This document shows positions 5,536-62,311 of a stretch of DNA of 64,000 nt, piece by piece. The DNA is taken from the NCBI GenBank assembly GCA_002269645.1, contig NIVC01000236.1:62001-126000 (forward strand), written 5' to 3'. The notes beneath the pieces are model-generated. The model was not told the origin of the DNA. It did not search any database and saw only the letters and a list, made by a program, of their open reading frames with translations. Numbering within the stretch: the first letter of the stretch is position 1; the number at the start of each line of letters is the position of its first letter. A program made the translations under genes and the position numbers. The DNA comes from Macrostomum lignano (Eukaryota).

Positions 5536-5689
5536 GCACTCGAGACCTGTTGCTATAGGGATGGGCGGCAGTTCAAATCATTATTTTCTTATTAAGGAGA
5601 AATGGTGCTTTCGATCTTGCGTTCGGGCTTTAATTGTAGTTTTTAATTTTATAGTCCGTTATCCAAAATTCGCGTTTACGATCCACTAT

Positions 5690-6325
5690 CCCAAATCCTC
5701 AGGTGTGATCCTCCACCCTCCCAGATCCTCAGGTGTGATCCGCCACTCTCCCAAATCCTCAGGTGTGATCCGCCACTCTCTCAGTTCCTCAGGTGTGATC
5801 CGCCACTCTCTCAGTTCCTCAGGTGTGATCCGCCACCCTCCCAGATCCTCAGGTGTTAACTGCCAGCCTCCCAGACCTCAGGTGTGATCCGCCACCCTCC
5901 CAGATCCTCAGGTGTGATCCGCCACCCTCCCAGATCCTCAGGTGTGATCCGCCACCCTCCCAGATCCTCAGGTGTGATCCGCCACCCTCCCAGATCCTCA
6001 GGTGTGATCCGCCACCCTCCCAGATCCTCAGGTATGATCCGCCACCCTCCCAGATCCTCAGGTGTGATCCGCCACCCTCCCAGATCCTCAGGTGTGATCC
6101 GCCACCCTCCCAGATCCTCAGGTGTGATCCGCCACCCTCCCAGATCCTCAGGTGTGATCCGCCACCCTCCCAGATCCTCAGGTATGATCCGCCACCCTCC
6201 CAGATCCTCAGGTGTGATCCGCCACCCTCCCAGATCCTCAGGTGTGATCCGCCACCCTCCCAGATCCTCAGGTGTGATCCGCCACCCTCCCAGATCCTCA
6301 GGTGTTAACTGCCAGCCTCTCAAAT
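5690..6325. repeat. 30-bp minisatellite (gtgtgatccgccaccctcccagatcctcag)
   Basis: About 20 tandem copies visible; explains the ORFs at 5853-6345. Confidence 0.95.
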
Positions 6326-6670
6326 CCTTCAAAACCAGTTTCTAGCTTAAGAGCAGCAGTTTTGCACCTAAATTATCCATAATAATGTTTTACTCCAGTT
6401 ACGCCAGTCTTTAAATAATTAGTCTATCGTGCTGGATAGTCTATCGGACTACCAATTCAAACAATAATACTTTTTGGTTGTCACTGACTAGTTATAAACA
6501 CTATTTTCTGCTTTTTAGCAGTAGTAATTTTGGTTGCCTTGCCGCGCGCATATCTGTGTGCTTTTCGTGTACTTTTAATAAACAGTGATTAAGAAATCGC
6601 TATGCGTGTCACGTGACTTTTGATTTTGCCGAGGCGCAGTTCTGGTTATTTTTATTTTATTTGTCTACAG

Positions 6671-9630
6671 GTGTCTGCCATTGAAGTATATCACTCGGGG
6701 TCTTTTATTAAAGTTTCTGTCACTTCAGTGTCTACCGTTGAAGTGTCTGTCTCTCGAGTGTCTGTCACTCTGGTATCTTCGATTGAAGGTTCTGTCACTC
6801 GGGTGTCTGCTATTTAGGTTTCTGTCACTCGGGTGTCTGTCATTCCGGTGTCTACCATTGAGGTGTCTGTCACTCCGGTGTCTGCTATTGAAGTGTCTCT
6901 CGAGTGTCTGCTATTGAAGTGTCTCTCGAGTGTCTGCTATTGAAGTGTCTCTCGAGTGTCTGCTATTGAAGTGTCTCTCGAGTGTCTGCTACTGAAGTGT
7001 CTCTCGAGTGTCTGCTATTGAAGTGTATGTCTCTCGGGTCTGCTATTGAAGTGTATGTCTCTCGGGTGTCTGCTATTGAAGTGTATGTCTCTCGAGTGTC
7101 TGCTACTGAAGTGTCTCTCGAGTGTCTGCTATTGAAGTGTCTCTCGAGTGTCTGCTACTGAAGTGTCTCTCGAGTGTCTGCTATTGAAGTGTCTCTCGAG
7201 TGTCTGCTATTGAAGTGTATGTCTCTCGAGTGTCTGCTATTGAAGTGTATGTCTCTCGAGTGTCTGCTATTGAAGTGTATGTCTCTCGAGTGTCTGCTAT
7301 TGAAGTGTATGTCTCTCGAGTGTCTGCTATTGAAGTGTATGTCTCTCGGGTGTCTGCTATTGAAGTGTCTCTCGGGTGTCTGCTATTGAAGTGTATGTCT
7401 CTCGGGTGTCTGCTATTGAAGTGTCTCTCGGGTGTCTGCTATTGAAGTGTATGTCTCTCGAGTGTCTGCTATTGAAGTGTATGTCTCTCGAGTGTCTGCT
7501 ATTGAAGTGTATGTCTCTCGAGTGTCTGCTATTGAAGTGTATGTCTCTCGAGTGTCTGCTATTGAAGTGTATGTCTCTCGAGTGTCTGCTATTGAAGTGT
7601 ATGTCTCTCGAGTGTCTGCTATTGAAGTGTCTCTCGAGTGTCTGCTATTGAAGTGTATGTCTCTCGGGTGTCTGCTATTGAAGTGTATGTCTCTCGAGTG
7701 TCTGCTATTGAAGTGTCTCTCGAGTGTCTTCTATTGAAGTGTATGTCTCTCGGGTGTCTGCTATTGAAGTGTATGTCTCTCGGGTGTCTGCTATTGAAGT
7801 GTATGTCTCTCGAGTGTCTGCTATTGAAGTGTATGTCTCTCGAGTGTCTGCTATTGAAGTGTCTCTCGAGTGTCTGCTATTGAAGTGTCTCTCGAGTGTC
7901 TGCTATTGAAGTGTCATTCGGGTGTCCTCTATTGAAGTGTATGTCTCTCGAGTGTCTGCTATTGAAGTGTATGTTTCTCGAGTGTCTGCTATTGAAGTGT
8001 ATGTCTCTCGAGTGTCTGCTATTGAAGTGTATGTCTCTCGGGTGTCTGCTATTGAAGTGTATGTCTCTCGAGTGTCTGCTATTGAAGTGTATGTCTCTCG
8101 AGTGTCTGCTATTGAAGTGTATGTCTCTCGAGTGTCTGCTATTGAAGTGTATGTCTCTCGAGTGTCTGCTATTGAAGTGTATGTCTCTCGAGTGTCTGCT
8201 ATTGAAGTGTATGTCTCTCGGGTGTCTCCTATTGAAGTGTATGTCTCTTGGGTGTCTACCATTGAAGTTCTGTCACTCGGGTGTCTGCTATTTAGGTTTC
8301 TGTCACTCGGGTGTCTTCGTTGAAGTGTCTGTCTCTTGGGTGTCTACCATTGAAGTGTATGTCTCTCGGGTGTCTGCTATTGAAGTGTCTCTCGAGTGTC
8401 TGCTATTGAAGTGTATGTCTCTTGGGTGTCTGCTATTGAAGTGTATGTCTCTCGGGTGTCTGCTATTGAAGTGTATGTCTCTCGGGTGTCTGCTATTGAA
8501 GTGTATGTCTCTCGGGTGTCTGCTATTGAAGTGTATGTCTCTCGGGTTTCTGCTATTGAAGTGTCTCTCGAGTGTCTGCTATTGAAGTGTCTCTCGGGTG
8601 TCTGCTATTGAAGTGTCTCTCGAGTGTCTGCTATTGAAGTGTATGTCTCTCGAGTGTCTGCTATTGAAGTGTATGTCTCTCGAGTGTCTGCTATTGAAGT
8701 GTATGTCTTTCGAGTGTCTGCTATTGAAGTGTGTGTCTCTCGAGTGTCTGCTATTGAAGTGTATGTCTCTCGAGTGTTTGCTATTGAAGTGTGTGTCTCT
8801 CGAGTGTCTGCTATTGAAGTGTATGTCTCTCGAGTGTCTGCTATTGAAGTGTATGTCTCTCGAGTGTCTGCTATTGAAGTGTATGTCTCTCGGGTGTCTG
8901 CTATTGAAGTGTCTCTCGGGTGTCTGCTATTGAAGTGTCTCTCGAGTGTCTGCTACTGAAGTGTCTCTCGAGTGTCTGCTATTGAAGTGTATGTCTCTCG
9001 GGTGTCTGCTATTGAAGTGTATGTCTCTCGGGTGTCTGCTATTGAAGTGTCTCTCGAGTGTCTGCTATTGAAGTGTCTCTCGGGTGTCTGCTATTGAAGT
9101 GTATGTCTCTCGAGTGTCTGCTATTGAAGTGTATGTCTCTCGGGTGTCTGCTATTGAAGTGTATGTCTCTCGGGTGTCTGCTATTGAAGTGTCTCTCGAG
9201 TGTCTGCTATTGAAGTGTCTCTCGGGTGTCTGCTATTGAAGTGTCTCTCGAGTGTCTGCTATTGAAGTGTATGTCTCTCGGGTGTCTGCTATTGAAGTGT
9301 ATGTCTCTCGAGTGTCTGCTATTGAAGTGTATGTCTCTCGAGTGTCTGCTATTGAAGTGTATGTCTCTCGGGTGTCTGCTATTGAAGTGTCTGTCTCTCG
9401 AGTGTCTGCTATTGAAGTGTATGTCTCTTGGGTGTCTCCTATTTAGGTTTCTGTCACTCGGGTGTCTGCTATTTAGGTTTCTGTCACTCGGGTGTCTGCT
9501 ATTTAGGTTTCTGTCACTCGGGTGTCTGCTATTTAGGTTTCTGTCACTCGGGTGTCTGCTATTTAGGTTTCTGTCACTCGGGTGTCTGCTATTTAGGTTT
9601 CTGTCACTCGGGTGTCTTCGTTGAAGTGTC
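6671..9630. repeat. ~3-kb minisatellite of mixed 30-bp and 26-bp units (gtgtctgctattgaagtgt[atgt]ctctcga) with a tttaggtttctgtcactcgg variant
   Basis: Direct inspection; generates the MSAIEV/CLLLK ORFs. Confidence 0.97.
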
Positions 9631-9698
9631 TGTCGCCGAACCGCTCACATCCCCCGCCGCTGCCCACCACTCCTGCGCAAGCAGCCGCCACCGCAAGA

Positions 9699-10824: not shown

Positions 10825-14991
<4,167 letters not shown>

Positions 14992-23629: not shown

Positions 23630-24720
23630 CCCCCGGACCCTGGCTTCCCTCCCTCCTAACCCCTGGCTTCAATCCTAACCCCTAGCTTCCCTTCTTTGAC
23701 CCCTGACTTCCTTCCCCTAATCTTGGGTTCTCCCCCTGACCCCTGGCTTCCCTTCTTTCTAACCCCTGGCTGCACGCTTAACCCCTGGCTTCCCTCCTCT
23801 GACCCTGGCTTCTCTCCCCTTGACCCCTGGCTTCCCTCCCTTGACTCTGGCTTCCCTCCCCTGACTCTGGCTTCCCTCCCCTGACCTTGGCTTCTCCTTC
23901 CTGGCCCCTGGCTTCCCTCTCCCGTGACCCCTGGCTTCCCTCCTTCCTAACCCCTGGCTTTACTCCTAACCCCTGGCTTCCCTCCTCTGACCCTGGCTTC
24001 TCTCCCGACCCCTGGCTTCCCTCCCCTGACCCTGGCTTCCCTCCCCTGACCCTGGCTTCTCTCCCCTGACCCTGGCTTCCCTCCCGACCCCTGGCTTCCC
24101 TCCCCTGACCCTGGCTTCCCTCCCCTGACCCTGGCTTTTCCCTCCTGACCCCTGGCTTCCCTCCCCTGACCCTGGCTTCTCTCCCGACCCCTGGCTTCCC
24201 TCCCCTGACCCTGGCTTCCCTCCTTCCTAACCCCTGGCTTTACTCCTAACCGCTGGCTTCCCTCCCCTGACCCTGGCTTCCCTCCCCTGACCCTGGCTTC
24301 CCTCCCCTGACCCTGGCTTCCCTCCCCTGACCCTGGCTTCCCTCCCCTGACCCTGGCTTCCCTCCCCTGACCCTGGCTTCCCTCCCCTGACCCTGGCTTC
24401 CCTCCCCTGACCCTGGCTTCCCTCCCCTGACCCTGGCTTCCCTCCCCCGACCCCTGGCTTCCCTCCTTCCTAACCCCTGGCTTTACTCCTAACCGCTGGC
24501 TTCTCCCCCGACTTCTGGCTTCCCTCCCCTGACCCTGGCGTGGCTTCTCCCTCTTGACCACTGGCTTCCCTCCCCTGACCCTGGCTTCCCTCCCCTGACC
24601 CTGGCTTCCCTCCCCCGACCCCTGGCTTCCCTCCCCGACCCCTGGCTTCCCTCCCCTGACCCTGACTTCTCTCCCCCTGGCCCTGGCCTTTCTCCTTACT
24701 AACCCCTGGCTTCCCTCCTT
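23630..24720. repeat. 20-21-bp minisatellite (ccctggcttccctcccctga), left arm
   Basis: Tandem copies; inverted counterpart at 34690-35880. Confidence 0.93.
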
Positions 24721-25240
24721 CCTAACCCCTCCCAGGCTAACCCTCCTACTCTACCCCTCCCAGCTACGCTCTCTAGGCTACCCCTCCCAGGCTACCCCTG
24801 CCATTGTACCCCTCCTAGGCATCCCTCCCAGACAGCCCCTCAGGCTCCCCTCCTACTTTACCCCTCAGGCTCCCCTCTTACTTTACCCCTCCCAGGCAGC
24901 CCTTCCAGGCTACTCCTCCCAGGCTACCCCTTCCATGGCAACCACTTCCAGGCTATCTCCCACTGTACCCCTGTGTACTGTCTCTATTTATGTTCGAAAC
25001 TGAGAAGATTGTTTCGTTTCGGTATTATTTAAAAAGATAATGCATCATTTTTTACTTCAGACGCTTCACTCTCATCATTTCAGGTGCGTACATGCGAGTC
25101 AGCTAACGCTGACGCCGCACTTTGTATTCGGCTTTCCAACGGGGAACTGTGCGTTTATGAAAGCCATTTGGGATTTGGGATGCCAGAAAAGATATTCTAT
25201 TTTGCAAGGATCCGATAAAAGCTGCCGCTTCGGCTGCACT

Positions 25241-25438
25241 GCAGTGACCGCCGGCTCAAGCGGAGACGATCGCAGGACTGTTTGCTGCCTGCCGCTTGCT
25301 GCAGTGACCGCCGGCTCAAGCGGAGACGATCGCAGGACTGTTTGCTGCCTGCCGCTTGCTGCAGTGACCACCGGCTCAAGCGGAGACGATCGCAGGACTG
25401 TTTGCTGCCTGCCGCTTGCTGCAGTGACCGCCGGCTCG
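25241..25438. repeat. 60-bp tandem repeat, about 3.3 copies, left arm
   Basis: Unit gcagtgaccgccggctcaagcggagacgatcgcaggactgtttgctgcctgccgcttgct starts at 25241, 25301, 25361 and 25421 (partial). Confidence 0.95.
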
Positions 25439-25995
25439 CTGCTTCGCGTGCTGTCATCTACGAGTGTTGCGAGTGCTAAGGGCGAACGAAGGACTAATTA
25501 AGGAGCATATTATCCGATTTCCTTCAGAGGAGATCTTTGGCATTTATTTATCTTCGCGTGGAATTAGCAGTGAGTAAAAAAATATGTGTATTTTATGCTG
25601 CCGCTTATACACTCTACAATATCATCAGCAGAATACGAAAAATGAGGTCGTTTAAAACAAAATAGTACGTAGATTTTCTGCACGTTACGCGTATTTAGCT
25701 TCTTCCTAGTGAAATCAGTGAATTGTTTTGGTCGCGTACATAACCTATTCAGCTTCTCCGCTCATAGTCACTCCAGCATCAAGTGCTAACAATGCAAATT
25801 AGCTATGAACTGTATTGGAATACTTTGCATCATGCATTTGCATTTTAAATAAAAGGACTTTTTCTCTCGTTCATTGGCAGGTGTCGAGATGAGACTAAGC
25901 AATGTGCATTATGCTGCTGCCGATGCACAGGACGCAGAGTGCAATCAGGATCCTCGTGAGGTGAAAGAAGACGACAGTGACGACTACGGCATGTA

Positions 25996-26095
25996 GGTCG
26001 GGAGGTTCCGCCTCCCGGAGCGCGCTCGCGCGCTTCCCATGGCTGCCGCCTTCACGCGGCGGGACCGTCCGGGTTCGCCCGGCCAAGTGCAGCCA
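25996..26095 (+). ncRNA. Candidate HDV-like (CPEB3-type) self-cleaving ribozyme at the LINE 5' end
   Basis: P2 TGGCTGC (26040-46) / GCAGCCA (26089-95); P3 GCC/GGC around L3 TTCACGC; P1 3' strand GGGACC then GT; P4 CCGGG-TTCG-CCCGG; J4/2 CCAA. P1 5' GGTC starts at the first base after the TSD. Confidence 0.7.
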
Positions 26096-29000
26096 CCACC
26101 CCGGACCCGTGCGAGGGTCTTCGAGCGCCCCGGGTTTTTCCACGCTGAGCCAGGCCTCCCAGCTCACCTGGCTCAGCTGCTTCTCAGAGCTGGAGACGTC
26201 GAGTCCAACCCTGGGCCGGCCTTCCCGTGCGGAGGCTGTGCCGAGGAGGTAGCCAGGGGCTACTCCACCTGCTGCTCCGACTGCGGCCTGTGGTGGCACC
26301 GCCGTTGTTCCCGCCTCACTATTGCGGCTATCAACCGGCTCCACCGGGACAAGGCACCGTGGCACTGTCCCACCTGCGCCCACCAGCCTGCCGCTTCAGC
26401 GCCGCAGCCCGCTGCGACTCCGGCCCCTCCGCGGCTGCAGGCCCCACTGGCACCCACCAGACGCCAACGGCTACGACTCCACCTCCCCCGAACCCCGCAC
26501 CGGCACCCCCGCCCTCCCTGATGGCGCAACCAGCGCGGGCGGGGGCGCCGAACAACAGCGGGGCGGCTTTCCGCATCGTCCAGCTCAACGCGGCAGGGCT
26601 CCGCTCCCGCAAGCTGGAACTGCTCCACTTCCTGGAGAAGCAGGGCGCCGACGTCGCCTGCATCCAGGAGACGAACCTGTCCGGCAACACAGCGGCCCCA
26701 CGCCTCAAAGGGTGGCAGATCGCTGGCCGGAAGGACCGCAACATCGGCCGCGACGGGGAGGCAGCCAGAACCCACCACGGGGGCGTCTGCTTCCTTGTCA
26801 AGGAGGGCATTCAATTCGCCGACCTTCCACTAGGCGAGCTCGTCACCCACGCCACGTCCGCCGAAGCCTCGGGCCTCCGTATCCACGACCCCCGGCTACC
26901 ACGTCCCCTGGATGTGATCAACATCTACCTCCCGCCGGTCCGCGCCGCAGACGGCCGCACGGACGCCTTCGAGCCCGACTGGATCCCCGTTTCACGGGAC
27001 TCGTTGGTGCTGGGCGACTTCAACGCCCACCACGGGATGTGGGACGCCTCGGCGGACGACGACGAGCTGGGCAGGGCCCTCGAAGACTGGGCGACGACCT
27101 ACGACCTGGTCGCTCTGAACGACGGCTCCCCAACTAGGATCAGCCCCCGCGGCCTGCCGAGCTCCCCTGACGTCTCCTTCGCCCACGCCTCCTGGCAAGA
27201 CCGGATCGAGTGGCGAACCGGGGAGCACATCGGCTCAGACCACCTGCCGATCATCATCGACATCGCAGCCTCCGGCCCGGCCCGCTCCAGCTCCAAGCGC
27301 CTGACGCGGTACGCCTACCACAAGGCGGACTGGGACCTGTTCCAGCGGACCCTCGACCAGGCCCTGGCCAGCTGGCCGGAGCGCCCCCCACGCACGGTGC
27401 CCGTCGCCGCCAACCGGTTCGCGTCCGCCGTCACCAGCGCCGCCAAGGCGGCCATCCCGAGAGGCTGCCGGCGCGCCCCGATCGCCTGGTGGTGCCCGGA
27501 AGCCGAGGCGGCCTGCACCGCCCGCCGCGCGGCGCTCGAAGCGCTTCGCGCGAGCCCGGACGACCCGGCGCTCTCGGCCGCGTACCAGGCTGCTGCCGCC
27601 GCGGCTGCTCACGCCATCTGCCGCGCCAAGGAGTCGCTGTGGCGTGATTTCATCACTGACCCGGGTCACGACCTGTGTTCCGCCGACCTCTGGCGGATCA
27701 TCCGGGCCCTCGACGGACGGTCCCAGGGCACCCCCTCGTCGGCTGCCATCCAGGGCTCCACGGGGGCACCGGCCGTCTCCGACAAACAGAAGGCCGCGCT
27801 TTTCTGCCGGGAGTACGCCGCCGTCAGCAGGCTCCCCAAGAACAAGGCGGAAGACCGGCCGGTCATCCAAGAAGCCCGTCACACGCTCCGCGCCCCCTGC
27901 AGCTGCCAAGGCCTCCGCAGCGGCCCCTGCTCCGACTTCCAGCCCGACGCCCTCCGCCGCGCCTTGGTGCGCCTGCCGGACCGCTCGGCCCCGGGACCGG
28001 ACGGGGTCGCGAACATCATGCTGAAGCATCTGTCCGACCTGGGGCTCCGCTGCCTCCTGGACCTCCTGAACCTCTCGTGGAGGACGGGGGAGGTGCCCGC
28101 CCCGTGGCGCCTTGCGGAGATCCGCCCGATCCCCAAATCGGACAAGCCAGCCGGCCTGACATCCAGCTTCCGCCCTATCAGCCTCCTCAGCTGCCTGGGC
28201 AAGCTCGCGGAGAAGATGGTGAACGAGCGGCTGTCCTACATCCTCGAGGCAAATGACGCTCTCCACCCGTCGCAAGCCGGTTTCCGTCAGGGCCGCTCCA
28301 CGGAGGAGCACATCGCCGCGGCGGCCCAGTACATTTTCGACGGTTTCCAGGCCAAGAAGCCGGCAGCCCGCACCGCTCTGCTCCTTGCAGACTTCTCCAG
28401 AGCCTACGACCGCGTCTGGAGAGCCGCCCTCATCGTCAAGCTCGGTCGGAAGGGGATCCCCACGTGCCTCATCCGCTGGCTCAAGGGATTTCTCTCCGAC
28501 AGGAGGGCCTTCGTGCGGTGGGTCAGTGCGGCCTGCAAGCCAACCGTGTTCTCCGAGGGGCTGCCGCAGGGGTCGGTCCTCGCCCCGATCCTGTGGGTGA
28601 TCTACATGGACGACCTCCTGGACGGCGCCCCCACGAACTGCCTCACGCTGGCGTACGCCGACGACAGCACCTTCGGCGCGCAAGGGACCACCCCTCGGGA
28701 GTGTGAGCGGGCCCTGCAACCGGCGGCCGACTGGCTCGTGCGCTGGTCCCAAACCTGGAAGGTGGACCTGAGCCGCACCAAGTCGGTCGTCGCTTTCTTC
28801 TCGCTCGACCCCCGGGAGGTCAACGGAAAGGTCCAGCCGCGCATCCTCCTCGGCGACTCGCCAGCTCCGTTCGAGCTGCATCCGAGGCTCCTGGGAGTGC
28901 ACCTCGACTCCCAGCTGACCTTCCGCCACCACGCCGAGCTCCGGCGCCGCGCCCTCCAGCAGCGCACCGGCGTCCTACGCTGCCTCGCGGGCCGCGACTG

Positions 29001-30418
29001 GGGCCAGGACGGCCAGCGCCTCGTCCAGCTCTACCGCACCTACGCGGAGGCGGCCGCGCTCCACGGCGCCTCCACGTGGCTCACCTTCGCGTCCGACTCC
29101 TGCCGGGACGAAGTCGAGATTGCGCACCGATCGGCCGCCCGCGTCATCACTGGCTGCTGCCGCTCGACCGCCATTGGCCCCCTCATGGCTGAGGCCGACC
29201 TCGTGCCCCTGGCGACCAGAGCGGAGGCGGCAGGCGCAGCCCTGTTCGAGCGAGCCCTCCGTCACCGACAACCGACTCCGCTCCGCGCTGCAGCGGGCAA
29301 GACCTCTACGCCCCGCTTGCGCGCTCACGGGGAGCCTGGGGCCTTCCGTAGGAACTGGCGCGACTCGGCGCAGCACCTGAGCGCCGCCGCCGGCCTGGCC
29401 ACCCTCCCCCGGGAGCAGGAAAACCTCCCTCCGCCGCCATGGTCCGACACCAGCCGGGTCACCATCCGCTGCGACCTCCTGACCGCGACCTCCGAGAGGA
29501 GGCGCCCCACGTCAGAAAGCTGGCCGCGCTGGAGACGCTGGCGAGCCTCCCGCCCGCCGACCTGGAGCTCTGGACAGACGGTTCAGCCTCCGGGGCACCC
29601 TCAACGGCGGAGCGGGGGCGGTCATCTTCAGCAAGACCGCGCCGCCAGTCCACCTGTCGCAGGCTGCGGGCCGTCACTCTTCCTCCTTCCGTGCCGAGGA
29701 GTCGGCTCTCCGGCTGGGGCTTCAGCACGTCGCCTCCAGGCCGGACCTTGCCTCCCTGAGCGGCCTCCGCTGCCTGACGGACTCGCAGTCCCTGCTCCGA
29801 GCCCTCGAGAAGGGACCGTCCAAGTCCTCCTCGCCAGCGTGCCGGGAGATCTGGACGCTGCTGACCCACGTCGCCGCCCGCTTCCCAATCTGGCTGCAAT
29901 GGGTCCCCAGCCACTGCGACCTCCGGCGGAACGATGCTGCGGACGTCACCGCCAAGACCGCGGCCGGCCTCCCCCAGAACGAGACGCCGATCGACTTCGG
30001 GTCAGCGCGGGCCGCCCTCCGCCGGGTCCTCGCCGAGCGCACCCGCGAAGCCAACGCGGCCGACCCGCACTGCGCCACCCACCGTCTGGCAACCGCCATC
30101 GCCGCCCCGCGGCCACGCCTTAACCGGGCCGACGCGGTGACCCTCGCCCAGCTGCGCACGGGCCACTCACCGCTCCTGCGCTGGTATCGGCACCGGATCG
30201 GCCTGGACACCGCCGCCACCTGCCCCCGCTGCGGGGCCGCCGACGAAGACGTGGCCCACGTCCTCCTGCACTGCCGGGCCCTTGACGACCTTCGGGCCCG
30301 CACCCTAGGGCGAAACCCGTCCCTGGCCGTCCTCTCGACGGACGGCCTCCGCGCGCTCGATTTCCTCCGCACGGTAGGGGCGCAGACACGCCCCCCGGAT
30401 CCAACCGGCCGGGAGTAA
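26039..30418 (+). CDS. LINE polyprotein (about 1460 aa if continuous), split in this sequence by three -1 frame changes (between about 26400-26520, about 29490 and about 29590)
   Basis: One frame carries 2A/PHD (26039-26521), the next APE-RT, the next the ...LELWTDGSA segment, and the original frame resumes for the rest of RNase H and CCHC to TAA 30416-30418. Confidence 0.8.
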
Positions 30419-31239
30419 CAACAACAACAACTACGGCATGTATGACTATTCAGCCACATTGCACAGAAATTAGCTGTTAGCCGTATAAATATGTTTAGTC
30501 ACACTTCTCTGTGCCCGTGGCGTATACAACATTTAATCCATGACCTCTGCAATATTGCACTACCATCAAATGCTGACGCTCTCTCTCCCACTCTGTAATG
30601 CTGTGATCAGTTTTGTCCTCCCTGTCGAGTTTTGCTAACCAAACTTTGAGAGAACTAAGCAGCGCGTTTTTCGACAAGCGTTGGCTGTTTATATTTTTTC
30701 ATTGTCTTTTGTCAATGTACAGTTTTACGAGTGTATACTTGACTGTATATTATGAAGATGTGCCTCTAAAATAAAACAGACTTAATTGCTTTTACCTATG
30801 CTTTTTACGATAATTCACTCTGTCCTGTCCTGAAACATTCCTGTTTTATCGAATTCTCTTTTGATGATGACACAAATATGGTCACATGACGGTCACAAAG
30901 AATAGTGGGAGGTAGAGCCATAGGGCGAGATGTATAAAGTATATGAATTTACATTACAGTAGTCTCAATGGTTTGCCTGCCCCTCTTGGCCTCCCTTTCT
31001 CCTTCTCGCCCTCTGTCGCTGCAGCACCTGTTGGTTAAAAATGAGAGGAAAGCTCGGCGAGAAAAGCCTCTGTGTAAAAGTCTCGTGCTCCCATAGCGTG
31101 ACATCCTGTCACTTTTTAAATAGCCATGACTTTCCTGGTACATGGACACTTACATATGTAAGTTGTTTCCATCCGATTAAGACAAATGATCTATAATTAG
31201 TATAGGTGGATATTAGTAGAAATAAATTCAGTCAGTCTT

Positions 31240-33719: not shown

Positions 33720-34175
33720 AGCGATCGTCCTCCGCTTAAGCCGGCGGTCACTGCAGCAAGCGGCAGGCAGCAAACAGTCCTGCGATCGTCTCCGCTTGAG
33801 CCGGCGGTCACTGCAGCAAGCGGCAGGCAGCAAACAGTCCTGCGATCGTCCTCCGCTTGAGCCGGCGGTCACTGCAGCAAGCGGCAGGCAGCAAACAGTC
33901 CTGCGATCGTCTCCGCTTGAGCCGGCGGTCACTGCAGCAAGCGGCAGGCAGCAAACAGTCCTGCGATCGTCTCCGCTTGAGCCGGCGGTCACTGCAGCAA
34001 GCGGCAGGCAGCAAACAGTCCTGCGATCGTCTCCGCTTGAGCCGGTGGTCACTGCAGCAAGCGGCAGGCAGCAAACAGTCCTGCGATCGTCTCCGCTTGA
34101 GCCGGCGGTCACTGCAGCAAGCGGCAGGCAGCAAACAGTCCTGCGATCGTCTCCGCTTGAGCCGGCGGTCACTGC
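33720..34175. repeat. 60-bp tandem repeat, about 7-8 copies, right arm (reverse complement of the 25241 array)
   Basis: Direct inspection. Confidence 0.95.
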
Positions 34176-34689
34176 AGTGCAGCCGAAGCGGCAGCTTTTA
34201 TCGGATCCTTGCAAAATAGAATATCTTTTCTGGCATCCCAAATCCCAAATGGCTTTCATAAACGCACAGTTCCCCGTTGGAAAGCCGAATACAAAGTGCG
34301 GCGTCAGCGTTAGCTGACTCGCATGTACGCACCTGAAATGATGAGAGTGAAGCGTCTGAAGTAAAAAATGATGCATTATCTTTTTAAATAATACCGAAAC
34401 GAAACAATCTTCTCAGTTTCGAACATAAATAGAGACAGTACACAGGGGTACAGTGGGAGATAGCCTGGAAGTGGTTGCCATGGAAGGGGTAGCCTGGGAG
34501 GAGTAGCCTGGAAGGGCTGCCTGGGAGGGGTAAAGTAAGAGGGGAGCCTGAGGGGTAAAGTAGGAGGGGAGCCTGAAGGGCTGTCTGGGAGGGATGCCTA
34601 GGAGGGGTACAATGGCAGGGGTAGCCTGGGAGGGGTAGCCTAGAGAGCGTAGCTGGGAGGGGTAGAGTAGGAGGGTTAGCCTGGGAGGG

Positions 34690-35880
34690 GTTAGGAAGGA
34701 GGGAAGCCAGGGGTTAGTAAGGAGAAAGGCCAGGGCCAGGGGGAGAGAAGCCAGGGTCAGGGGAGGGAAGCCAGGGGTCGGGGGAGGGAAGCCAGGGTCA
34801 GGGGAGGGAAGCCAGGGTCAGGGGAGGTAAGCCAGCGGTTAGGAGTAAAGCCAGGGGTTAGGAAGGAGGGACGCCAGGGGTCAAGGGAGAGGGAAGCCAG
34901 GGGTCAGGAGGGAGTAGCCAGGGGTCAGGAGGGAGAAGCCAGGGTTAGGGGAGGGAAGCCAGGTGTCAAGGGGGAGGGAAGCCAGGGGTCGGGAGAGAAG
35001 CCAGGGTCAGGGGAGGGAAGCCAGGGTCAGGGGAGGGAAGCCAGGGGTCAGGGGAGGGAAGCCAGGGTCAGGGGAGGGAAGCCAGGGTCAGGGGAGGGAA
35101 GCCAGGGGTCAAGAGGGAGAAGCCAGGGGTCAGGAGAGAGAAGCCAGGGGTCAGGGGAGGGAAGCCAGGGGTCGGGGGAGGGAAGCCAGGGTCAGGGGAG
35201 GGAAGCCAGGGTCAGGGGAGGGAAGCCAGGGTCAGGGGAGGGAAGCCAGGGTCAGGGGAGGTAAGCCAGCGGTTAGGAGTAAAGCCAGGGGTTAGGAAGG
35301 AGGGACGCCAGGGGTCAGGAGGGAGAAGCCAGGGGTCAGGAGGGAGAAGCCAGGGTTAGGGGAGGGAAGCCAGGGGTCAAGAGGGAGAAGCCAGGGTCAG
35401 GGGAGGGAAGCCAGGGGTCAAGGGGGAGGGAAGCCAGGGGTCAAGAAGGAGAAGCCAGGGTCAGGGGAGGGAAGCCAGGGGTCAGGAGGGAGAAGCCAGG
35501 GTCAGGGGAGGGAAGCCAGGGGTCGGGAGAGAAGCCAGGAATCAGGGGGAGAGAAGCCAGAGATCAAGTGGAGAGAAGCCAGAGATCAGGGGGGTGAGAA
35601 GCCAGAGATCAGGGAGGGAGAAGCCAGGGATCAGGGGGAGAGAAGCCAGAGATCAGGGGGAGAGAAGCCAGAGATCAGGGGGGAGAGAAGCCAGAGACCA
35701 GGGGGAGTAAAGCCAGGGATCAGGGAGGAGAGAAGCCAGAGATCAGGGGGAGAGAAGCCAGGGATTAGGAGTTAAGCCAAGGGTCAGGGGAGGGAAACTG
35801 GGGATCAGGAGTGAGAGAAACCAGGGTCAAAGGGAAGGAATTCAAGGGTCAAGGAAGAAGCCAGGGTCAAGGGACGAAAG
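34690..35880. repeat. 20-21-bp G-rich minisatellite (tcaggggagggaagccaggg), right arm
   Basis: Reverse complement of the 23630 array. Confidence 0.93.
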
Positions 35881-37695: not shown

Positions 37696-38139
37696 CCCCA
37701 ACCGCTTCCAGTCCAAGTGTTCAGTCCCAAGGCCCCCAGCCCCAACCTACAAGACCTGCCCAGCCCAGTTCGGCAATGTCAGTCCAGAATCCGTGCACAT
37801 TGTCTGCGTCGGCACGTTGCACAAGCAGTCACTTTTATTACCAATAAAGGAATGTGGCCCCAATAAAGGAGGTTATATCATATAATAAGCAATATCTGTT
37901 TTCCCATAAACAAGCTAATTCAGATTATTTCTTAAATTTCCCACGATATGAGAGATTTTTGTGTCCAATTTTTTATGACAGACCTAGCTCGGCGTCGGTG
38001 ACAATTCGAAATTGGGTCACCCGCTGCGTGTTGAGAGACTGCGTGCGGGGTCAGCGGAGCGGCATCTGAGCTCGGAAAGCCAGCCTTTGTTTCTTTCTAT
38101 TTGCCATGGAGTGTAAATTCTCGAAATATAGTATAGTGT

Positions 38140-40130
38140 CAGTAGAAAACATTGTCAGTAGAGAGCATTGTCAGTAGAGAACATTGTCAGTAGAGAGCAT
38201 TGTCAGTAGAGAGCATTGTCAGTAGAGAACATTGTCAGTAGAGAGCATTGTCAGTAGAGAACATTGTCAGTAGAGAGCATTGTCAGTAGAGAGCATTGTC
38301 ACTAGAGAGCATTGTCAGTAGAGAACATTGTCAGTAGAGAGCATTGTCAGTAGAGAACCTTGTCAGTAGAGAGCATTGTCAGTAGAGAGCATTGTCAGTA
38401 GAGAACATTGTCAGTAGAGAGCATTGTCAGTAGAGAACATTGTCAGTAGAGAGCATTGTCAGTAGAGAACATTGTCAGTAGAGAACATTGTCAGTAGAGA
38501 GCATGGTCAGTAGAGAACATTGTCAGTAGAGAACATTGTCAGTAGAGAACATTGTCAGTAGAGAGCATGGTCAGTAAATAATATTGACAGTAGAGAAGAT
38601 TGTCAGTAGAGAAGACTGTCAGTAGAGAAGATTGTCAGTAGAGAAGATTGTCAGTAGAGAAGACTGTCAGTAGAGAAGATTGTCAGTAGAGAAGATTGTC
38701 AGTAGAGAAGATTGTCAGTAGAGAAGATTGTCAGTAGAGAAGATTGTCAGTAGAGAACATTGTCAGTAGAGAACATTGTCAGTAGAGAACATTGTCAGTA
38801 GAGAACATTGTCAGTAGAGAACATTGTCAGTAGAGAACATTGTCAGTAGAGAACATTGTCAGTAGAGAACATTGTCAGTAGAGAACATTGTCAGTAGAGA
38901 ACATTGTCAGTAGTGAGCATGGTCAGTAAATAATATTGACAGTAGAGAAGATTGTCAGTAGAGAAGATTGTCAGTAGAGAAGATTGTCAGTAGAGAAGAT
39001 TGTCAGTAGAGAAGACTGTCAGTAGAGAAGATTGTCAGTAGAGAAGACTGTCAGTAGAGAAGATTGTCAGTAGAGAAGATTGTCAGTAGAGAAGATTGTC
39101 AGTAGAGAAGATTGTCAGTAGAGAAGATTGTCAGTAGAGAACATTGTCAGTAGAGAACATTGTCAGTAGAGAACATTGTCAGTAGAGAGCATTGTCAGTA
39201 GAGAACATTGTCAGTAGAGAACATTGTCAGTAGAGAACATTGTCAGTAGAGAACATTGTCAGTAGAGAACATTGTCAGTAGAGAACATTGTCAGTAGTGA
39301 GCATGGTCAGTAAATAATATTGACAGTAGAGAAGATTGTCAGTAGAGAAGATTGTCAGTAGAGAAGATTGTCAGTAGAGAAGATTGTCAGTAGAGAAGAC
39401 TGTCAGTAGAGAAGATTGTCAGTAGAGAAGATTGTCAGTAGAGAAGATTGTCAGTAGAGAAGATTGTCAGTAGAGAAGATTGTCAGTAGAGAACATTGTC
39501 AGTAGAGAACATTGTCAGTAGAGAACATTGTCAGTAGAGAACATTGTCAGTAGAGAACATTGTCAGTAGAGAACATTGTCAGCAGAGAGCATTATCAGTA
39601 GAGAACATTGTCAGTAGAGAGCATTGTCAGTAGAGAGCATTGTCAGTAGAGAACATTGTCAGTAGAGAGCATTGTCAGTAGAGAACATTGTCAGTAGAGA
39701 GCATTGTCAGTAGAGAACATTGTCAGTAGAGAGCATTGTCAGTAGAGAGCATTGTCAGTAGAGAACATTGTCAGTAGAGAGCATTGTCAGTAGAGAACAT
39801 TGTCAGTAGAGAACATTGTCAGTAGAGAACATTGTCAGTAGAGAGCATGGTCAGTAAATAATATTGACAGTAGAGAAGATTGTCAGTAGAGAAGACTGTC
39901 AGTAGAGAAGATTGTCAGTAGAGAAGATTGTCAGTAGAGAAGATTGTCAGTAGAGAAGATTGTCAGTAGAGAAGATTGTCAGTAGAGAACATTGTCAGTA
40001 GAGAACATTGTCAGTAGAGAACATTGTCAGTAGAGAACATTGTCAGTAGAGAACATTGTCAGTAGAGAACATTGTCAGTAGAGAACATTGTCAGTAGAGA
40101 AGATTGTCAGCAGAGAAGATTGTCAGCAGA
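38140..40130. repeat. 16-bp satellite (attgtcagtagagaac and gagc/gaag variants), about 2 kb
   Basis: Direct inspection. Confidence 0.98.
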
Positions 40131-40299
40131 GAATTTCAATTGCTGAAACACATCTGTCAAAAATCTGCCTCTTGTTACTAACAGTAGTTAACTTAGGCAT
40201 TTAGCTTGCAGTTAAATGCAGGTTACTTTGCGCACAGCCGCAAAATCACAGGCGACAGGCGCGCGCCCAGCGTTGAGGCAAGCAGCCATGCGATGCCCC

Positions 40300-61600: not shown

Positions 61601-62311
61601 CTCAATCCTAATTTCAATATCAATATCAATCTCATTCTCAATCTCAGTCTTACCCTCATCCTCATCTTTAGTCACAATATCGCAGTCTCTCACCTGCCAC
61701 GCCTAGGTTGGTGATGAAGCAGGTCATGCGGCACTTCTGTCGCCTGGCCACGCTTGCCAGTAGCGCCGTGTTGCCAATGAGAATGAGCGCCAGGTTCACG
61801 GACAGTGACAGGAAGTAGCCCAGCTGGTTCAGCTGTCAGTTCGGTGGGGGAGTTGGGGGGGGGGCTTCGAGTTCGCAGTGTATGGCATAGATAATATAAA
61901 TAACAAATAAGCATTGAGCATATCAGGCTAGAGATGAAAAAGAAGAAAACCGATCATAAGAAAAAGCTTGACGTCGAGGAGTTTCATGCAGATTCGAGAG
62001 AGGCGGCCCTGTTTCCTGCAGCGGGCAAGGCAATTAACTGCCCGTCCTCCGATCTGTCGCTTCTGTAAGCCCGCCGGCTTGGCCGTCTGAGCCAGCCTCA
62101 GCTTTGATTGGCATCCGGGATGGAGAAAGGGCTCGGGCGAGAAGTGCAAAGCTCCGGCTTTGAATTGTCTTCTGCCGGAAAAAAATCTGTCTGCAGTCCG
62201 CAGATGAACAAAATCTCCGTGTATTTTTAAACGCACTGCCTGTTGCAGACAAACCAGTGGAAGTTTGCTGCTGCAAGGGCTCGACTGGTCAGGCCGGGTG
62301 TTATTCATCAT
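55604..62311 (-). CDS. Rhodopsin-class neuropeptide GPCR of the vasopressin/NPS/CCAP receptor group, most like NPS/CCAP receptors. Exons 61832-61694, 59657-59554, 59070-58971, 58655-58483, 57801-57525, 56665-56571, 56480-56422, 55922-55604; first exon tentatively 62311-62255
   Basis: Eight exons join in frame with GT-AG. TM1 LIGN; TM2 RMTCFITNLGVADL; ECL1 FLCK; TM3 LVALSIDRVDAISNP; TM4 W; TM5 FVIP; ICL3 RAKIKTVKVT; TM6 FILCWLPY; TM7 FIQTLGTLNSAANPIIF; C-tail CC. The candidate first exon (MMNNT..., weak GTTTGT donor) is uncertain. Confidence 0.88.
55940..56345. repeat. 26-bp G-rich minisatellite in the last GPCR intron
   Basis: gggatggggtggggttgcagagcccg tandem copies. Confidence 0.93.
57860..58440. 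repeat. 45-bp minisatellite filling a GPCR intron
   Basis: cagccccttgcatgctgactgcagtctaaaccgatgcctgaggat, about 13 copies. Confidence 0.96.
59145..59462. repeat. 15-bp minisatellite (acaatgccaccagac) in a GPCR intron
   Basis: About 20 copies. Confidence 0.96.
60645..61650. repeat. (ATCTCA)n hexamer array in a GPCR intron
   Basis: About 1 kb with atctaa/atccta variants. Confidence 0.97.

What the first reader, a model, noticed from the sequence alone, without database searches (positions are those of the whole stretch)
25996..26095. HDV/CPEB3-like self-cleaving ribozyme at the exact 5' end of the LINE, with an unusual branched P1
Seen: the core maps element by element onto the HDV-family nested double pseudoknot. 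P2 TGGCTGC/GCAGCCA (7 bp); P3 GCC/GGC; L3 TTCACGC (CPEB3 has UUCACGU); GT after P1, giving a single C-G P1.1 with a U-U mismatch as in CPEB3; P4 with a UUCG loop; J4/2 CCAA with the candidate catalytic C at 26083. The predicted cut is at the TSD boundary (G25996). The P1 3' strand GGGACC pairs with GGTC (25996-99) plus CC (26037-38), separated by two hairpins (GGGAGG-ttccg-CCTCCC and GGAGCGCG-ctcg-CGCGCTTC), so P1 appears interrupted by a four-way junction. The ORF start codon (26039) lies inside the fold. Established: HDV-like ribozymes process the 5' ends of R2, RTE and trypanosome L1Tc/ingi elements. Inference: an active ribozyme with a P1 variant I do not recognise as described.
Basis: partly seen in the sequence, partly recalled or inferred. 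Interest (0 to 1): 0.85.

Follow-up and report, generated by a model that had tools for sequence, protein, structure and literature searches.

The report
HDV-like ribozyme heading a LINE
The first 100 bases of a jumping gene (a LINE retrotransposon) contain a relative of the hepatitis-delta-type self-cutting RNA, as is already known for other LINEs; the unusual part is that in this copy the helix that sets the cut site seems to have been rebuilt from a new 36-base leader, which has not been shown experimentally.

Summary
A perfect 13-bp target-site duplication puts the LINE's first base at G25996.

The HDV-like core (26040-26095) is real and homologous to other sequences. A covariance model built only from six independent metagenomic relatives hits the window once, at 26032-26097 (39 bits, E about 2e-7). 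P2, P3 and P4 show compensatory changes, and six relatives inserted at different sites all begin at G1 of a canonical P1.

The strand homologous to the family's P1 5' strand is GCUUCC at 26032-37, not GGUC at 25996. A contiguous alternative, GGUUCC, lies at 26004-09. The window therefore carries a 36-nt 5' extension that the relatives lack.

The canonical P1 has a C-C mismatch and is locked inside hairpin 2. GGUC plus CC pair perfectly with GGGACC across a linker-free four-way junction. This model is about 8 kcal/mol better than either alternative and is the only one that fits the 5' end set by the duplication.

Best reading (about 0.5): the cleavage site shifted 36 nt upstream, as known for R2 ribozymes, with a split P1. 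Activity is untested, and no second copy of this subfamily could be found.

The parts
25983..25995 (+). Left target-site duplication ACTACGGCATGTA
   Evidence: Exact 13-mer repeated at 30430-30442.
25996..30429 (+). LINE element (about 4.43 kb, about 70% GC): ORF1, ORF2 (APE, RT, RNase H-like region, zinc finger), (AAC)n tail
   Evidence: TSD; composition; Pfam RVT_1, Exo_endo_phos and zf-RVT; 53% identical to P0001.
25996..26031 (+). 36-nt 5' extension absent from all relatives
   Evidence: The covariance-model hit and the sequence alignment both start at 26032. The relatives start at the homologue of 26032.
25996..25999 (+). GGUC: proposed new P1 5' strand (P1a), pairing with GACC 26063-66; predicted cut 5' of G25996
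   Evidence: Four Watson-Crick pairs; pair probability 0.99 in the fold of 25996-26068; coincides with the TSD boundary.
26000..26016 (+). Hairpin 1: GGGAGG-UUCCG-CCUCCC
   Evidence: Pair probability about 1.0 in every context tested; part of the minimum-energy fold.
26004..26009 (+). GGUUCC: alternative contiguous P1 5' strand (model E; cut at 26003/26004)
   Evidence: 6 of 6 pairs with GGGACC, and 9 of 9 when 26004-12 is paired with 26058-66. It competes with hairpin 1 and is 8.6 kcal/mol worse.
26017..26036 (+). Hairpin 2: GGAGCGCG-CUCG-CGCGCUUC; its 3' arm holds the ancestral P1 strand
   Evidence: Pair probability 0.6-0.99; overlaps GCUUC at 26032-36, the homologue of the family's P1 5' strand.
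26032..26037 (+). GCUUCC: homologue of the family's P1 5' strand (model B; cut at 26031/26032)
   Evidence: Identical to the invariant first six bases of the relatives. Pairs 5 of 6 with GGGACC, with C-C at bp 2.
26037..26038 (+). CC: proposed P1b, pairing with GG 26061-62
   Evidence: Complementarity only. Nearest-neighbour folding gives it low probability.
26039..26041 (+). AUG of ORF1; A26039 is the J1/2 nucleotide
26040..26046 (+). P2 5' strand UGGCUGC
   Evidence: Seven Watson-Crick pairs with 26089-95. In the family 5 of 6 P2 pairs show changes on both sides.
26048..26060 (+). P3 (GCC/GGC) enclosing L3 UUCACGC
   Evidence: P3 covaries (A-U in the family, G-U in L002, G-C here). L3 positions U1, U2, C3 and G6 are invariant in all members.
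26061..26066 (+). P1 3' strand (P1') GGGACC
   Evidence: The family consensus is GGAAGU. The changes at 26063 and 26065 are the ones that let GGUC pair.
26067..26068 (+). GU: G26067 pairs with C26053 (P1.1), with U-U beside it, as modelled for CPEB3
   Evidence: The C-G pair is kept in 6 of 7 sequences. CPEB3 model: bioRxiv 10.1101/2022.09.22.508989.
26069..26082 (+). P4: CCGGG-UUCG-CCCGG
   Evidence: The base of P4 is conserved and covaries, and its length ranges from 14 to about 80 nt in the family.
26083..26088 (+). J4/2 CCAAGU; C26083 is the candidate catalytic cytosine
   Evidence: The family has CAAAGC and L002 has CCAAAC. The first C is present in all but L018.
26089..26095 (+). P2 3' strand GCAGCCA
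26039..26521 (+). ORF1: 52-aa leader, 2A-type motif GDVESNPGP (26192-26218), PHD finger (about 26228-26377)
   Evidence: The L001 family has the same design with DIHPNPGP plus a PHD finger.
26519..26523 (+). UGAUG: overlapping ORF1 stop and ORF2 start
26521..30418 (+). ORF2 (APE, RT, RNase H-like region, zinc finger) with two frame breaks near 29510 and 29595
   Evidence: Pfam; tblastn against P0001 shows frames 1, 3 and 2.
30430..30442 (+). Right target-site duplication

Best explanation
Window 25996-26095 is the 5'-terminal processing ribozyme of a LINE with a 2A peptide, PHD finger, APE and RT. It is a member of the HDV-like (nested double-pseudoknot) class with a CPEB3-type L3 and P1.1. 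In the related elements the ribozyme is canonical: P1 (GCUUCC/GGAAGU, with G1-U at the base) starts at the element's first base and is joined to P2 by a 2-nt J1/2. In the window's lineage a 36-nt leader has been added. Its hairpin 2 locks away the old P1 strand. The P1 3' strand has changed to GGGACC, which mismatches the old strand (C-C at bp 2) and pairs perfectly with the new terminal GGUC and with CC 26037-38. P1 is therefore rebuilt across a linker-free four-way junction (P1a, hairpin 1, hairpin 2, P1b), and the cut moves 36 nt upstream to 25995/25996, the end recorded by the TSD. Inferred life cycle: the element is co-transcribed from upstream DNA and self-cleaves to give a 5'-OH RNA that starts at G25996. 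Translation starts at the AUG in J1/2. The 2A site then releases the leader peptide that the ribozyme sequence encodes. ORF2 is reached through the UGAUG stop-start overlap. Shown here: homology, covariation of the core, and the 5' ends. Inferred: catalysis, use of the split P1, and the translation steps.
For: A covariance model built from six relatives without the window hits only 26032-26097 (39.2 bits, E 1.7e-7). On the alignment of seven sequences 92% of cells are paired and 9 pairs change on both sides. None of 500 shuffles reaches this, and slid controls give 25-54% paired. Six insertions with unrelated flanks all begin at G1 of P1. A more distant relative, L002, has a compensatory P1 (GCCUCC/GGAGGU) and its own P2. 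L3 positions U1, U2, C3 and G6, the GU after P1, and the C-A-A of J4/2 are conserved. For the split P1: the perfect 13-bp TSD puts the 5' end at G25996. GGUC+CC pairs 6 of 6 by Watson-Crick with GGGACC, and the same strand would pair only 4 of 6 with the ancestral GGAAGU. Hairpin 1 has probability about 1.0 and hairpin 2 0.6-0.99. With the P2 strand kept free, the energies are -33.2 (split P1), -24.6 (contiguous P1 at 26004) and -25.3 kcal/mol (canonical P1). The minimum-energy fold of 25996-26068 closes with GGUC/GACC, z = -2.8. The 4+2 pairing plus two abutting hairpins occurs in 9 of 20000 shuffles. Precedents: R2 ribozymes shift their cut up to 36 nt upstream through P1' changes, with P1 and P1' separated by 23 to over 700 nt and J1/2 loops of 216-498 nt in silkmoths (PMC3774820). 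A structured J1/2 domain activates drz-Agam-2-1 (PMC4908430).
Against: There is only one copy of this subfamily, so nothing tests covariation at 25996-99/26063-66 or at 26037-38/26061-62. A P1 of 4+2 bp interrupted by a junction has no described precedent that I found, and its three-dimensional feasibility next to the P2/P3 stack is unknown. The cleavage-site pair would be G-C, not the conserved G-U wobble. P1b has negligible probability in nearest-neighbour folding. GGUC/GACC loses out once flanking or downstream sequence is included in a pseudoknot-free fold. A contiguous alternative P1 exists at 26004-09. No Rfam HDV-family model matches. The significance tests of the junction are post hoc.
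Confidence: 0.5

Rival explanations
1. Relic or silenced ribozyme. The core descends from the family's ribozyme but no longer cleaves in this lineage, because the canonical P1 carries a C-C mismatch and is trapped in hairpin 2. The 5' end at 25996 was set by something else, for example an internal promoter or start site in the 36-nt leader (as Pr77 works in L1Tc). The GGUC/GACC complementarity would then be chance.
For: The canonical P1 pairs only 5 of 6, with C-C at bp 2. [quoted passage not shown] L1Tc combines a promoter and a ribozyme in the same first 77 nt (PMC3185411). Four pairs at a fixed position arise by chance in roughly 2-5% of shuffles. The G-U wobble at the cut site is missing.
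Against: Apart from P1, every core feature is intact: 7-bp Watson-Crick P2, P3, P1.1, the UUCG-capped P4, and the C and AA of J4/2. The copy is young, with a perfect TSD and only two frame breaks. The two P1' substitutions that break the old P1 are the ones that make the new one. The linker-free junction is rare in shuffles. No initiator-like motif is evident at 25996 (by eye only).
Confidence: 0.28
2. Canonical ribozyme with a structured J1/2. P1 is the contiguous GGUUCC 26004-09 paired with GGGACC, hairpin 2 acts as a P1.2-type peripheral domain, hairpin 1 melts, and the cut falls at 26003/26004. The eight bases GGUCGGGA at the junction would then be leftovers of an uncleaved or aberrantly integrated template.
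For: 6 of 6 contiguous pairs, extendable to 9. This is the architecture known for drz-Agam-2-1 and R2 (PMC4908430, PMC3774820). Extra nucleotides at 5' junctions occur in Drosophila R2.
Against: It needs hairpin 1 (probability about 1.0) to melt and is 8.6 kcal/mol worse than the split-P1 model. The TSD puts the end 8 nt upstream. In the relatives 6 of 6 junctions are exact, with no extra bases. The eight 'extra' bases would by chance complete both hairpin 1 (GGGA/UCCC) and GGUC/GACC.
Confidence: 0.14
3. Chance resemblance. GC-rich sequence happens to satisfy an HDV-like descriptor and there is no ribozyme ancestry.
For: A loose descriptor matches 9% of shuffles of the first 120 nt and gives 7 hits in the window on both strands. 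No Rfam hit. The whole-region fold has z = -1.3.
Against: The independent covariance-model hit has E 1.7e-7 and is full length. The region aligns at sequence level to a family with compensatory changes and exact 5' ends.
Confidence: 0.03

Closest known systems
L1TcRz / Pr77 of Trypanosoma cruzi L1Tc and the L1Tc/ingi clade (PMC3185411, PMC3383444, PMC4035085)
   Same: An HDV-like ribozyme occupies the first bases of a non-site-specific LINE that encodes an N-terminal 2A peptide followed by APE, RT, RNase H and a zinc finger. The cut defines nucleotide +1 of the element.
   Different: No sequence similarity was tested or seen. The host here is an unidentified eukaryote and the relatives come from marine and other metagenomes. 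A PHD finger follows the 2A site. The window has a 36-nt leader with two hairpins. Promoter activity was not tested, and clade membership was not established.
R2 retrotransposon ribozymes (PMC3774820)
   Same: Processing of the 5' end of a co-transcript. The cut position is set by whichever upstream bases pair with P1', and lineages have shifted it up to 36 nt upstream through P1' changes. The distance between P1 and P1' ranges from 23 to over 700 nt, and J1/2 loops of 216-498 nt are reported in silkmoths.
   Different: R2 recruits flanking 28S rRNA sequence for P1 and keeps a contiguous P1 of about 7 bp. Here the new strand belongs to the element itself, the contiguous part is only 4 bp, and 2 further bp lie across a junction.
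drz-Agam-2-1 and other large HDV-like ribozymes with a J1/2-P1.2 domain (PMC4908430)
   Same: A stable helical domain inserted between P1 and P2 could pinch the two helices together. Hairpins 1 and 2 occupy that position.
   Different: In drz-Agam-2-1 the insertion lies after a complete P1. Here it falls after bp 4 of P1, and there are two hairpins with no linker nucleotides.
Mammalian CPEB3 ribozyme (bioRxiv 10.1101/2022.09.22.508989; Salehi-Ashtiani 2006 as cited there)
   Same: A weak P1.1 with one G-C pair beside U-U. GU directly joins P1 to P4. The catalytic C is the first base of J4/2.
   Different: CPEB3 is intronic and single-copy, has a contiguous P1 with a G-U wobble at its base, and is not associated with a retrotransposon. 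The identity is limited to a short loop, so common descent is not shown.

Membership tests
HDV-like self-cleaving ribozymes | P2, P3 and P4 helices in the order P1-P2-P3-P3'-P1'-P4-P4'-P2' (nested double pseudoknot) | tested here: met
   All helices are present. They are supported by compensatory changes in 7 sequences, plus L002.
HDV-like self-cleaving ribozymes | Contiguous P1 of about 6-7 bp whose first base is the cleavage site | tested here: inconclusive
   There are three candidates: a split 4+2 bp P1 starting at 25996, a contiguous 6 bp P1 at 26004, and the homologous strand at 26032 with 5 of 6 pairs and a C-C mismatch. The relatives have a canonical 6-bp P1.
HDV-like self-cleaving ribozymes | P1.1: the base after P1' pairs with a C in L3 | tested here: met
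   G26067 pairs with C26053. The C-G pair is kept in 6 of 7 sequences.
HDV-like self-cleaving ribozymes | Catalytic cytosine at the start of J4/2, followed by adenosines | tested here: met
   C26083 in CCAAGU; CAAAGC in 5 of 6 relatives, U in L018, CCAAAC in L002.
HDV-like self-cleaving ribozymes | G-U wobble as the cleavage-site pair | tested here: not met
   In the window the pair is G-C in all three P1 models. It is G-U in L031, L018, L010, L026 and L002, and G-C in L001.
HDV-like self-cleaving ribozymes | L3 with a 5' U and a G near its 3' end (reverse wobble) flanking the P1.1 cytosine | tested here: met
   L3 follows UUCNNGY in every member.
HDV-like self-cleaving ribozymes | Mg2+-dependent self-scission giving 5'-OH and 2',3'-cyclic phosphate ends | not testable with these tools
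   Needs in vitro transcription and cleavage assays.
HDV-like self-cleaving ribozymes | Match to a curated Rfam HDV-family model | tested here: not met
   No hit at gathering score or at E<=10, for the window or for L001. In my understanding these models are narrow and cannot score pseudoknots.
LINE 5'-terminal processing ribozymes (R2 / RTE / L1Tc type) | The ribozyme's first nucleotide is the element's first nucleotide, shown by unrelated upstream flanks | tested here: met
   Six independent insertions of the related family begin at G1. In the window the TSD end matches only the split-P1 model.
2A-bearing APE-type LINEs (Ingi, CR1, Crack, L2, Rex1; PMC3708506) | A D(V/I)ExNPGP motif near the N-terminus, upstream of PHD and/or APE | tested here: met
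   GDVESNPGP at 26192-26218, then a PHD finger (Pfam E 0.0015, below the curated cutoff), then APE and RT. The RT clade was not determined.

The most novel reading that the evidence does not exclude
An active HDV-like ribozyme whose substrate helix P1 is split by a perfect four-way junction. The lineage would have captured a new terminal P1 strand and locked its ancestral P1 strand into a hairpin, moving the cut 36 nt upstream within the element itself. Because the ORF1 AUG sits in J1/2 and competing pairings exist (26004-12 with 26058-66), the leader could also act as a switch between a cleaving fold and a translating fold.
Probability: 0.4. Interest if true: 0.65.

Novelty: new variant of a known kind. 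Interest (0 to 1): 0.5.

Why it matters
HDV-like ribozymes at LINE 5' ends are established. The core finding therefore adds a new family: LINEs with 2A, PHD, APE and RT, found in an unidentified eukaryote and in several metagenomes, with a CPEB3-type L3 and P1.1.

Three points go beyond that:

- **Split P1.** If P1 can be split by a four-way junction and still direct cleavage, descriptor searches that demand a contiguous 6-7 bp P1 are missing ribozymes. The tolerance of the fold's substrate helix would also be wider than assumed.
- **Moving cut site.** The comparison between the window and its relatives shows a cleavage site moving inside a non-site-specific LINE. Until now this was documented for R2, which borrows rRNA sequence.
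- **Possible role for the 2A site.** The start codon lies inside the ribozyme and a 2A site follows about 50 codons later. The 2A site may discard a leader peptide whose sequence is dictated by RNA structure. That is a testable explanation for why 2A sites sit at the N-termini of such LINEs.

Tried and rejected
- **Rfam.** Scans of the whole window and of small sub-windows, and of L001, gave no HDV-family hit. I treat this as uninformative rather than negative.
- **ORF1 protein search.** No homologues were found.
- **First Python descriptor.** It was far too permissive. The tightened version still gives 7 hits in the window, so a descriptor match alone is weak evidence.
- **Degenerate DNA pattern for the family core.** Scanned against prokaryotic genome contigs and viral contigs, it returned 15 hits. 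All are chance matches in GC-rich bacterial coding sequence with no P1' complement.
- **Copies of the window's own subfamily.** The window holds no second copy. The closest ORF2 relative anywhere is 53% identical, so the 36-nt leader could not be tested by covariation.
- **TSD for L001.** None of 8 bp or more was found.
- **P0008/L052 and P0007/L053.** P0008 has a 2A N-terminus, but only 98 and 34 nt of 5' sequence are available and no ribozyme is evident.
- **Host identification.** An ALDH9-like exon gave at best 59-65% identity to very diverse organisms.
- **Extension as a partial duplication of the core.** The local alignment has 16 identical positions over 21 alignment columns. That is too short and too GC-rich to count.

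Full report
**1. The observation.**
- GGTC 25996-99
- hairpin 1, GGGAGG-ttccg-CCTCCC, 26000-16
- hairpin 2, GGAGCGCG-ctcg-CGCGCTTC, 26017-36
- CC 26037-38 and ATG at 26039
- P2, TGGCTGC 26040-46 with GCAGCCA 26089-95
- P3, GCC 26048-50 with GGC 26058-60, and L3 TTCACGC 26051-57
- P1 3' strand GGGACC 26061-66, followed by GT
- P4, CCGGG-TTCG-CCCGG, 26069-82
- J4/2, CCAAGT, starting with C26083

The 13-mer ACTACGGCATGTA occurs at 25983-95 and again at 30430-42, just after an (AAC)n tail. The insertion is therefore 25996-30429 and its first base is G25996.

**2. The element.** It is about 70% GC in a host region of about 45% GC and is the only copy in the window. ORF1 (26039-26521) encodes a 52-residue leader, a canonical 2A motif (GDVESNPGP) and a PHD finger. 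ORF2 carries APE and RT domains and a C-terminal zinc finger. The ORF1 stop and ORF2 start overlap as UGAUG. Against its closest relative, ORF2 is interrupted by only two frame breaks, near 29510 and 29595. Together with the perfect TSD this points to a young copy.

**3. Database tests of the ribozyme claim.** Rfam gives nothing at gathering score for the whole window. It gives no HDV-family hit at E<=10 for 25900-26200 or 26033-26100. A loose HDV-core descriptor is met by 9% of dinucleotide shuffles of the first 120 nt, and a tightened descriptor still gives seven hits in the window. A descriptor match alone is therefore weak evidence in such GC-rich sequence.

**4. Relatives.** ORF1 has no detectable homologues. 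ORF2 has a 53%-identical relative, P0001, in a JGI metagenome, and others at 31-45%.
- The P0001 contig (L001) has the same design, DIHPNPGP followed by a PHD finger. Upstream it has a canonical HDV-like fold.
- A metagenome scan with the APE N-terminus returned 31 loci.
- BLAST of the L001 ribozyme region found the same sequence in L014, L026 (identical to L016), L031, L018 and L010.
- In all six independent insertions, homology begins at exactly the same G (GCTTCCTGTG...) and the upstream flanks are unrelated.
- The element's first base is therefore G1 of P1, as expected if self-cleavage makes the RNA 5' end.

**5. The family fold and its covariation.** The fold is as follows:

| Element | Sequence |
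|---|---|
| P1 | GCUUCC/GGAAGU, G1-U at the base in most members |
| J1/2 | UG |
| P2 | UGCGGC/GCCGCA |
| J2/3 | one C |
| P3 | ACC/GGU |
| L3 | UUCNNGU |
| J1.1/4 | GU |
| P4 | long hairpin |
| J4/2 | CAAAGC |

- P2 has compensatory changes at several positions: UGUGGC/GCCACA, UGCGAC/GUCGCA, and a U-A closing pair in L018 and L010.
- On an alignment of the six relatives plus the window, 92% of cells are paired and nine pairs change on both sides. None of 500 shuffles reaches these values, and sliding the partners gives only 25-54% pairing.
- A more distant relative (L002, 36% protein identity) was picked up weakly by the covariance model. It has P1 GCCUCC/GGAGGU, compensatory relative to GCUUCC/GGAAGU, its own 7-bp P2, L3 UUCAUGU, GU, and J4/2 CCAAAC.

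**6. Independent test on the window.** I built a covariance model from the six relatives only (P2, P3 and the base of P4 as pairs, the rest as sequence). It finds one significant hit in the whole window on both strands: 26032-26097 +, full length, 39.2 bits, E 1.7e-7. The next hit has E 0.9.

**7.
- The homology starts at 26032, not at 25996. Window GCUUCC 26032-37 is the counterpart of the family's invariant P1 5' strand, and bases 25996-26031 are an extension that no relative has.
- With the window's P1' (GGGACC), that canonical strand pairs only 5 of 6, with a C-C mismatch at bp 2. It is also buried in the 3' arm of hairpin 2.
- A second candidate, GGUUCC at 26004-09, pairs 6 of 6 contiguously. 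It extends to 9 of 9 with 26058-66 at the expense of P3 and hairpin 1.

**8. Weighing the three models.**
- *Energy.* With the P2 5' strand kept free, constrained folding gives -33.2 kcal/mol for the split P1, -24.6 for the contiguous P1 at 26004 and -25.3 for the canonical P1. Hairpin 1 has probability about 1.0 in every context and hairpin 2 has 0.6-0.99.
- *Folding of the 5' part.* The minimum-energy fold of 25996-26068 closes with GGUC/GACC around the two hairpins (z = -2.8; 1 of 200 shuffles folds as well).
- *The 5' end.* Only the split-P1 model predicts the end recorded by the TSD. In the relatives all six 5' junctions are exact, so stray extra bases are not typical of this group.
- *Which bases changed.* Compared with the consensus P1' GGAAGU, the window's changes at 26063 (A to G) and 26065 (G to C) let GGUC pair. 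The same strand would pair only 4 of 6 with the ancestral P1'.
- *The junction.* The four helices abut without a single unpaired base. The 4+2 pairing plus two abutting hairpins arises in 9 of 20000 shuffles of 25996-26038 (a post hoc test).
- *Against the split P1.* P1b (CC/GG) gets negligible probability in nearest-neighbour folding. GGUC/GACC is outcompeted when flanks are included in a pseudoknot-free fold. The cleavage-site pair would be G-C rather than G-U. There is no second copy to test covariation.

**9. Comparison with the literature.**
- HDV-like ribozymes process the 5' ends of R2, RTE, baggins and L1Tc elements (PMC6765202).
- L1Tc combines a 5'-terminal HDV-like ribozyme with an N-terminal 2A peptide and APE, RT and RNase H domains (PMC3185411). 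This is the same overall design.
- 2A-PHD-APE LINEs are known in metazoans, but that paper does not mention ribozymes (PMC3708506).
- In R2, the cut site is set by whichever upstream bases pair with P1'. It has shifted up to 36 nt upstream in several lineages through P1' changes. P1 and P1' lie 23 to over 700 nt apart, and silkmoth J1/2 loops reach 216-498 nt. P1 mismatches, including a C-C mismatch, were postulated to explain missing in vitro activity (PMC3774820).
- Large natural ribozymes carry a stable P1.2 helix in J1/2 that accelerates cleavage (PMC4908430).
- The L3 and P1.1 arrangement matches the CPEB3 model: one G-C pair beside U-U, with the catalytic C as the first base of J4/2.
- I found no description of a P1 interrupted by a junction.

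**10. Verdict.** The 5' end of this LINE carries a genuine member of a previously unannotated HDV-like ribozyme family (confidence about 0.9 for homology and fold; catalysis is untested). In this lineage the cleavage-defining helix has been remodelled. The best-supported reading is a 36-nt upstream shift of the cut with a split P1 (about 0.5). The alternatives are a silenced relic (about 0.28) and a contiguous P1 at 26004 with hairpin 2 as a P1.2 domain (about 0.14). Cleavage mapping with the mutants listed under next steps, or a census of 5' ends in the source genome, would decide between them.

Noticed in passing
window 26519-26523; L002 404-409; L005 about 100-155: The ORF1 stop and ORF2 start overlap as UGAUG in the window. 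Relatives L002 and L005 have a stop directly followed by a start (UAG-AUG, UAG-GUG). Just upstream they share a conserved hairpin (GGCGGGaCCG...CGGuCCCGC). This suggests termination-reinitiation for ORF2.
   Followed up: partly
window 26039-26218: The start codon lies in J1/2 of the ribozyme, so the first roughly 19 codons of the leader peptide are encoded by ribozyme helices. A canonical 2A site follows at codons 52-60. In the L001 family the ORF starts about 28 nt downstream of the ribozyme instead.
   Followed up: partly
window 24581-25437 and 33979-34835: An 857-nt, 99% inverted repeat, with flanking inverted 20-mer minisatellite arrays, brackets an 8.5-kb spacer that contains the LINE.
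   Followed up: partly
window, throughout (e.g. 5689-6328, 6832-9634, 11137-12575, 38137-40133, 60643-61650): The density of minisatellite arrays is very high: 37 Tandem Repeats Finder rows at score 200 or more, with periods of 6-188 bp.
   Followed up: no
window 2417-5218 and 13428-13979: Host genes: EST1/SMG-type ORFs and an ALDH9-like (aldehyde dehydrogenase) exon. The best database identity is only 59-65%, to very diverse organisms, so the host could not be identified.
   Followed up: partly
L002 51-150: A LINE relative at 36% protein identity carries the same ribozyme family. Its P1 is compensatory (GCCUCC/GGAGGU), it has its own 7-bp P2, there is an extra hairpin between P4 and J4/2, and 50 nt of unexplained sequence lie upstream on the contig.
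   Followed up: partly
window 26004-26012 and 26058-26066: GGUUCCGCC is 9 of 9 complementary (one G-U) to GGCGGGACC. This pairing excludes both hairpin 1 and P3 and could act as an alternative, non-cleaving conformer.
   Followed up: partly
window 29505-29600: Two frame changes within about 100 nt at the RT/RNase H boundary are the only breaks in ORF2 relative to P0001. They could be real indels or assembly errors.
   Followed up: no
window 28477-28594: A second match to my HDV-like descriptor lies inside the RT coding region (P1 TGGCTC, P2 ACAGGA/TCCTGT, L3 TTCGTGC). It is probably chance, given seven descriptor hits in the window.
   Followed up: no
window 30416-30429; L001 4499-4519: The 3' ends of the window element and L001 are similar up to the stop codon but carry different microsatellite tails: (AAC)n in the window and (GA)n in L001.
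   Followed up: no
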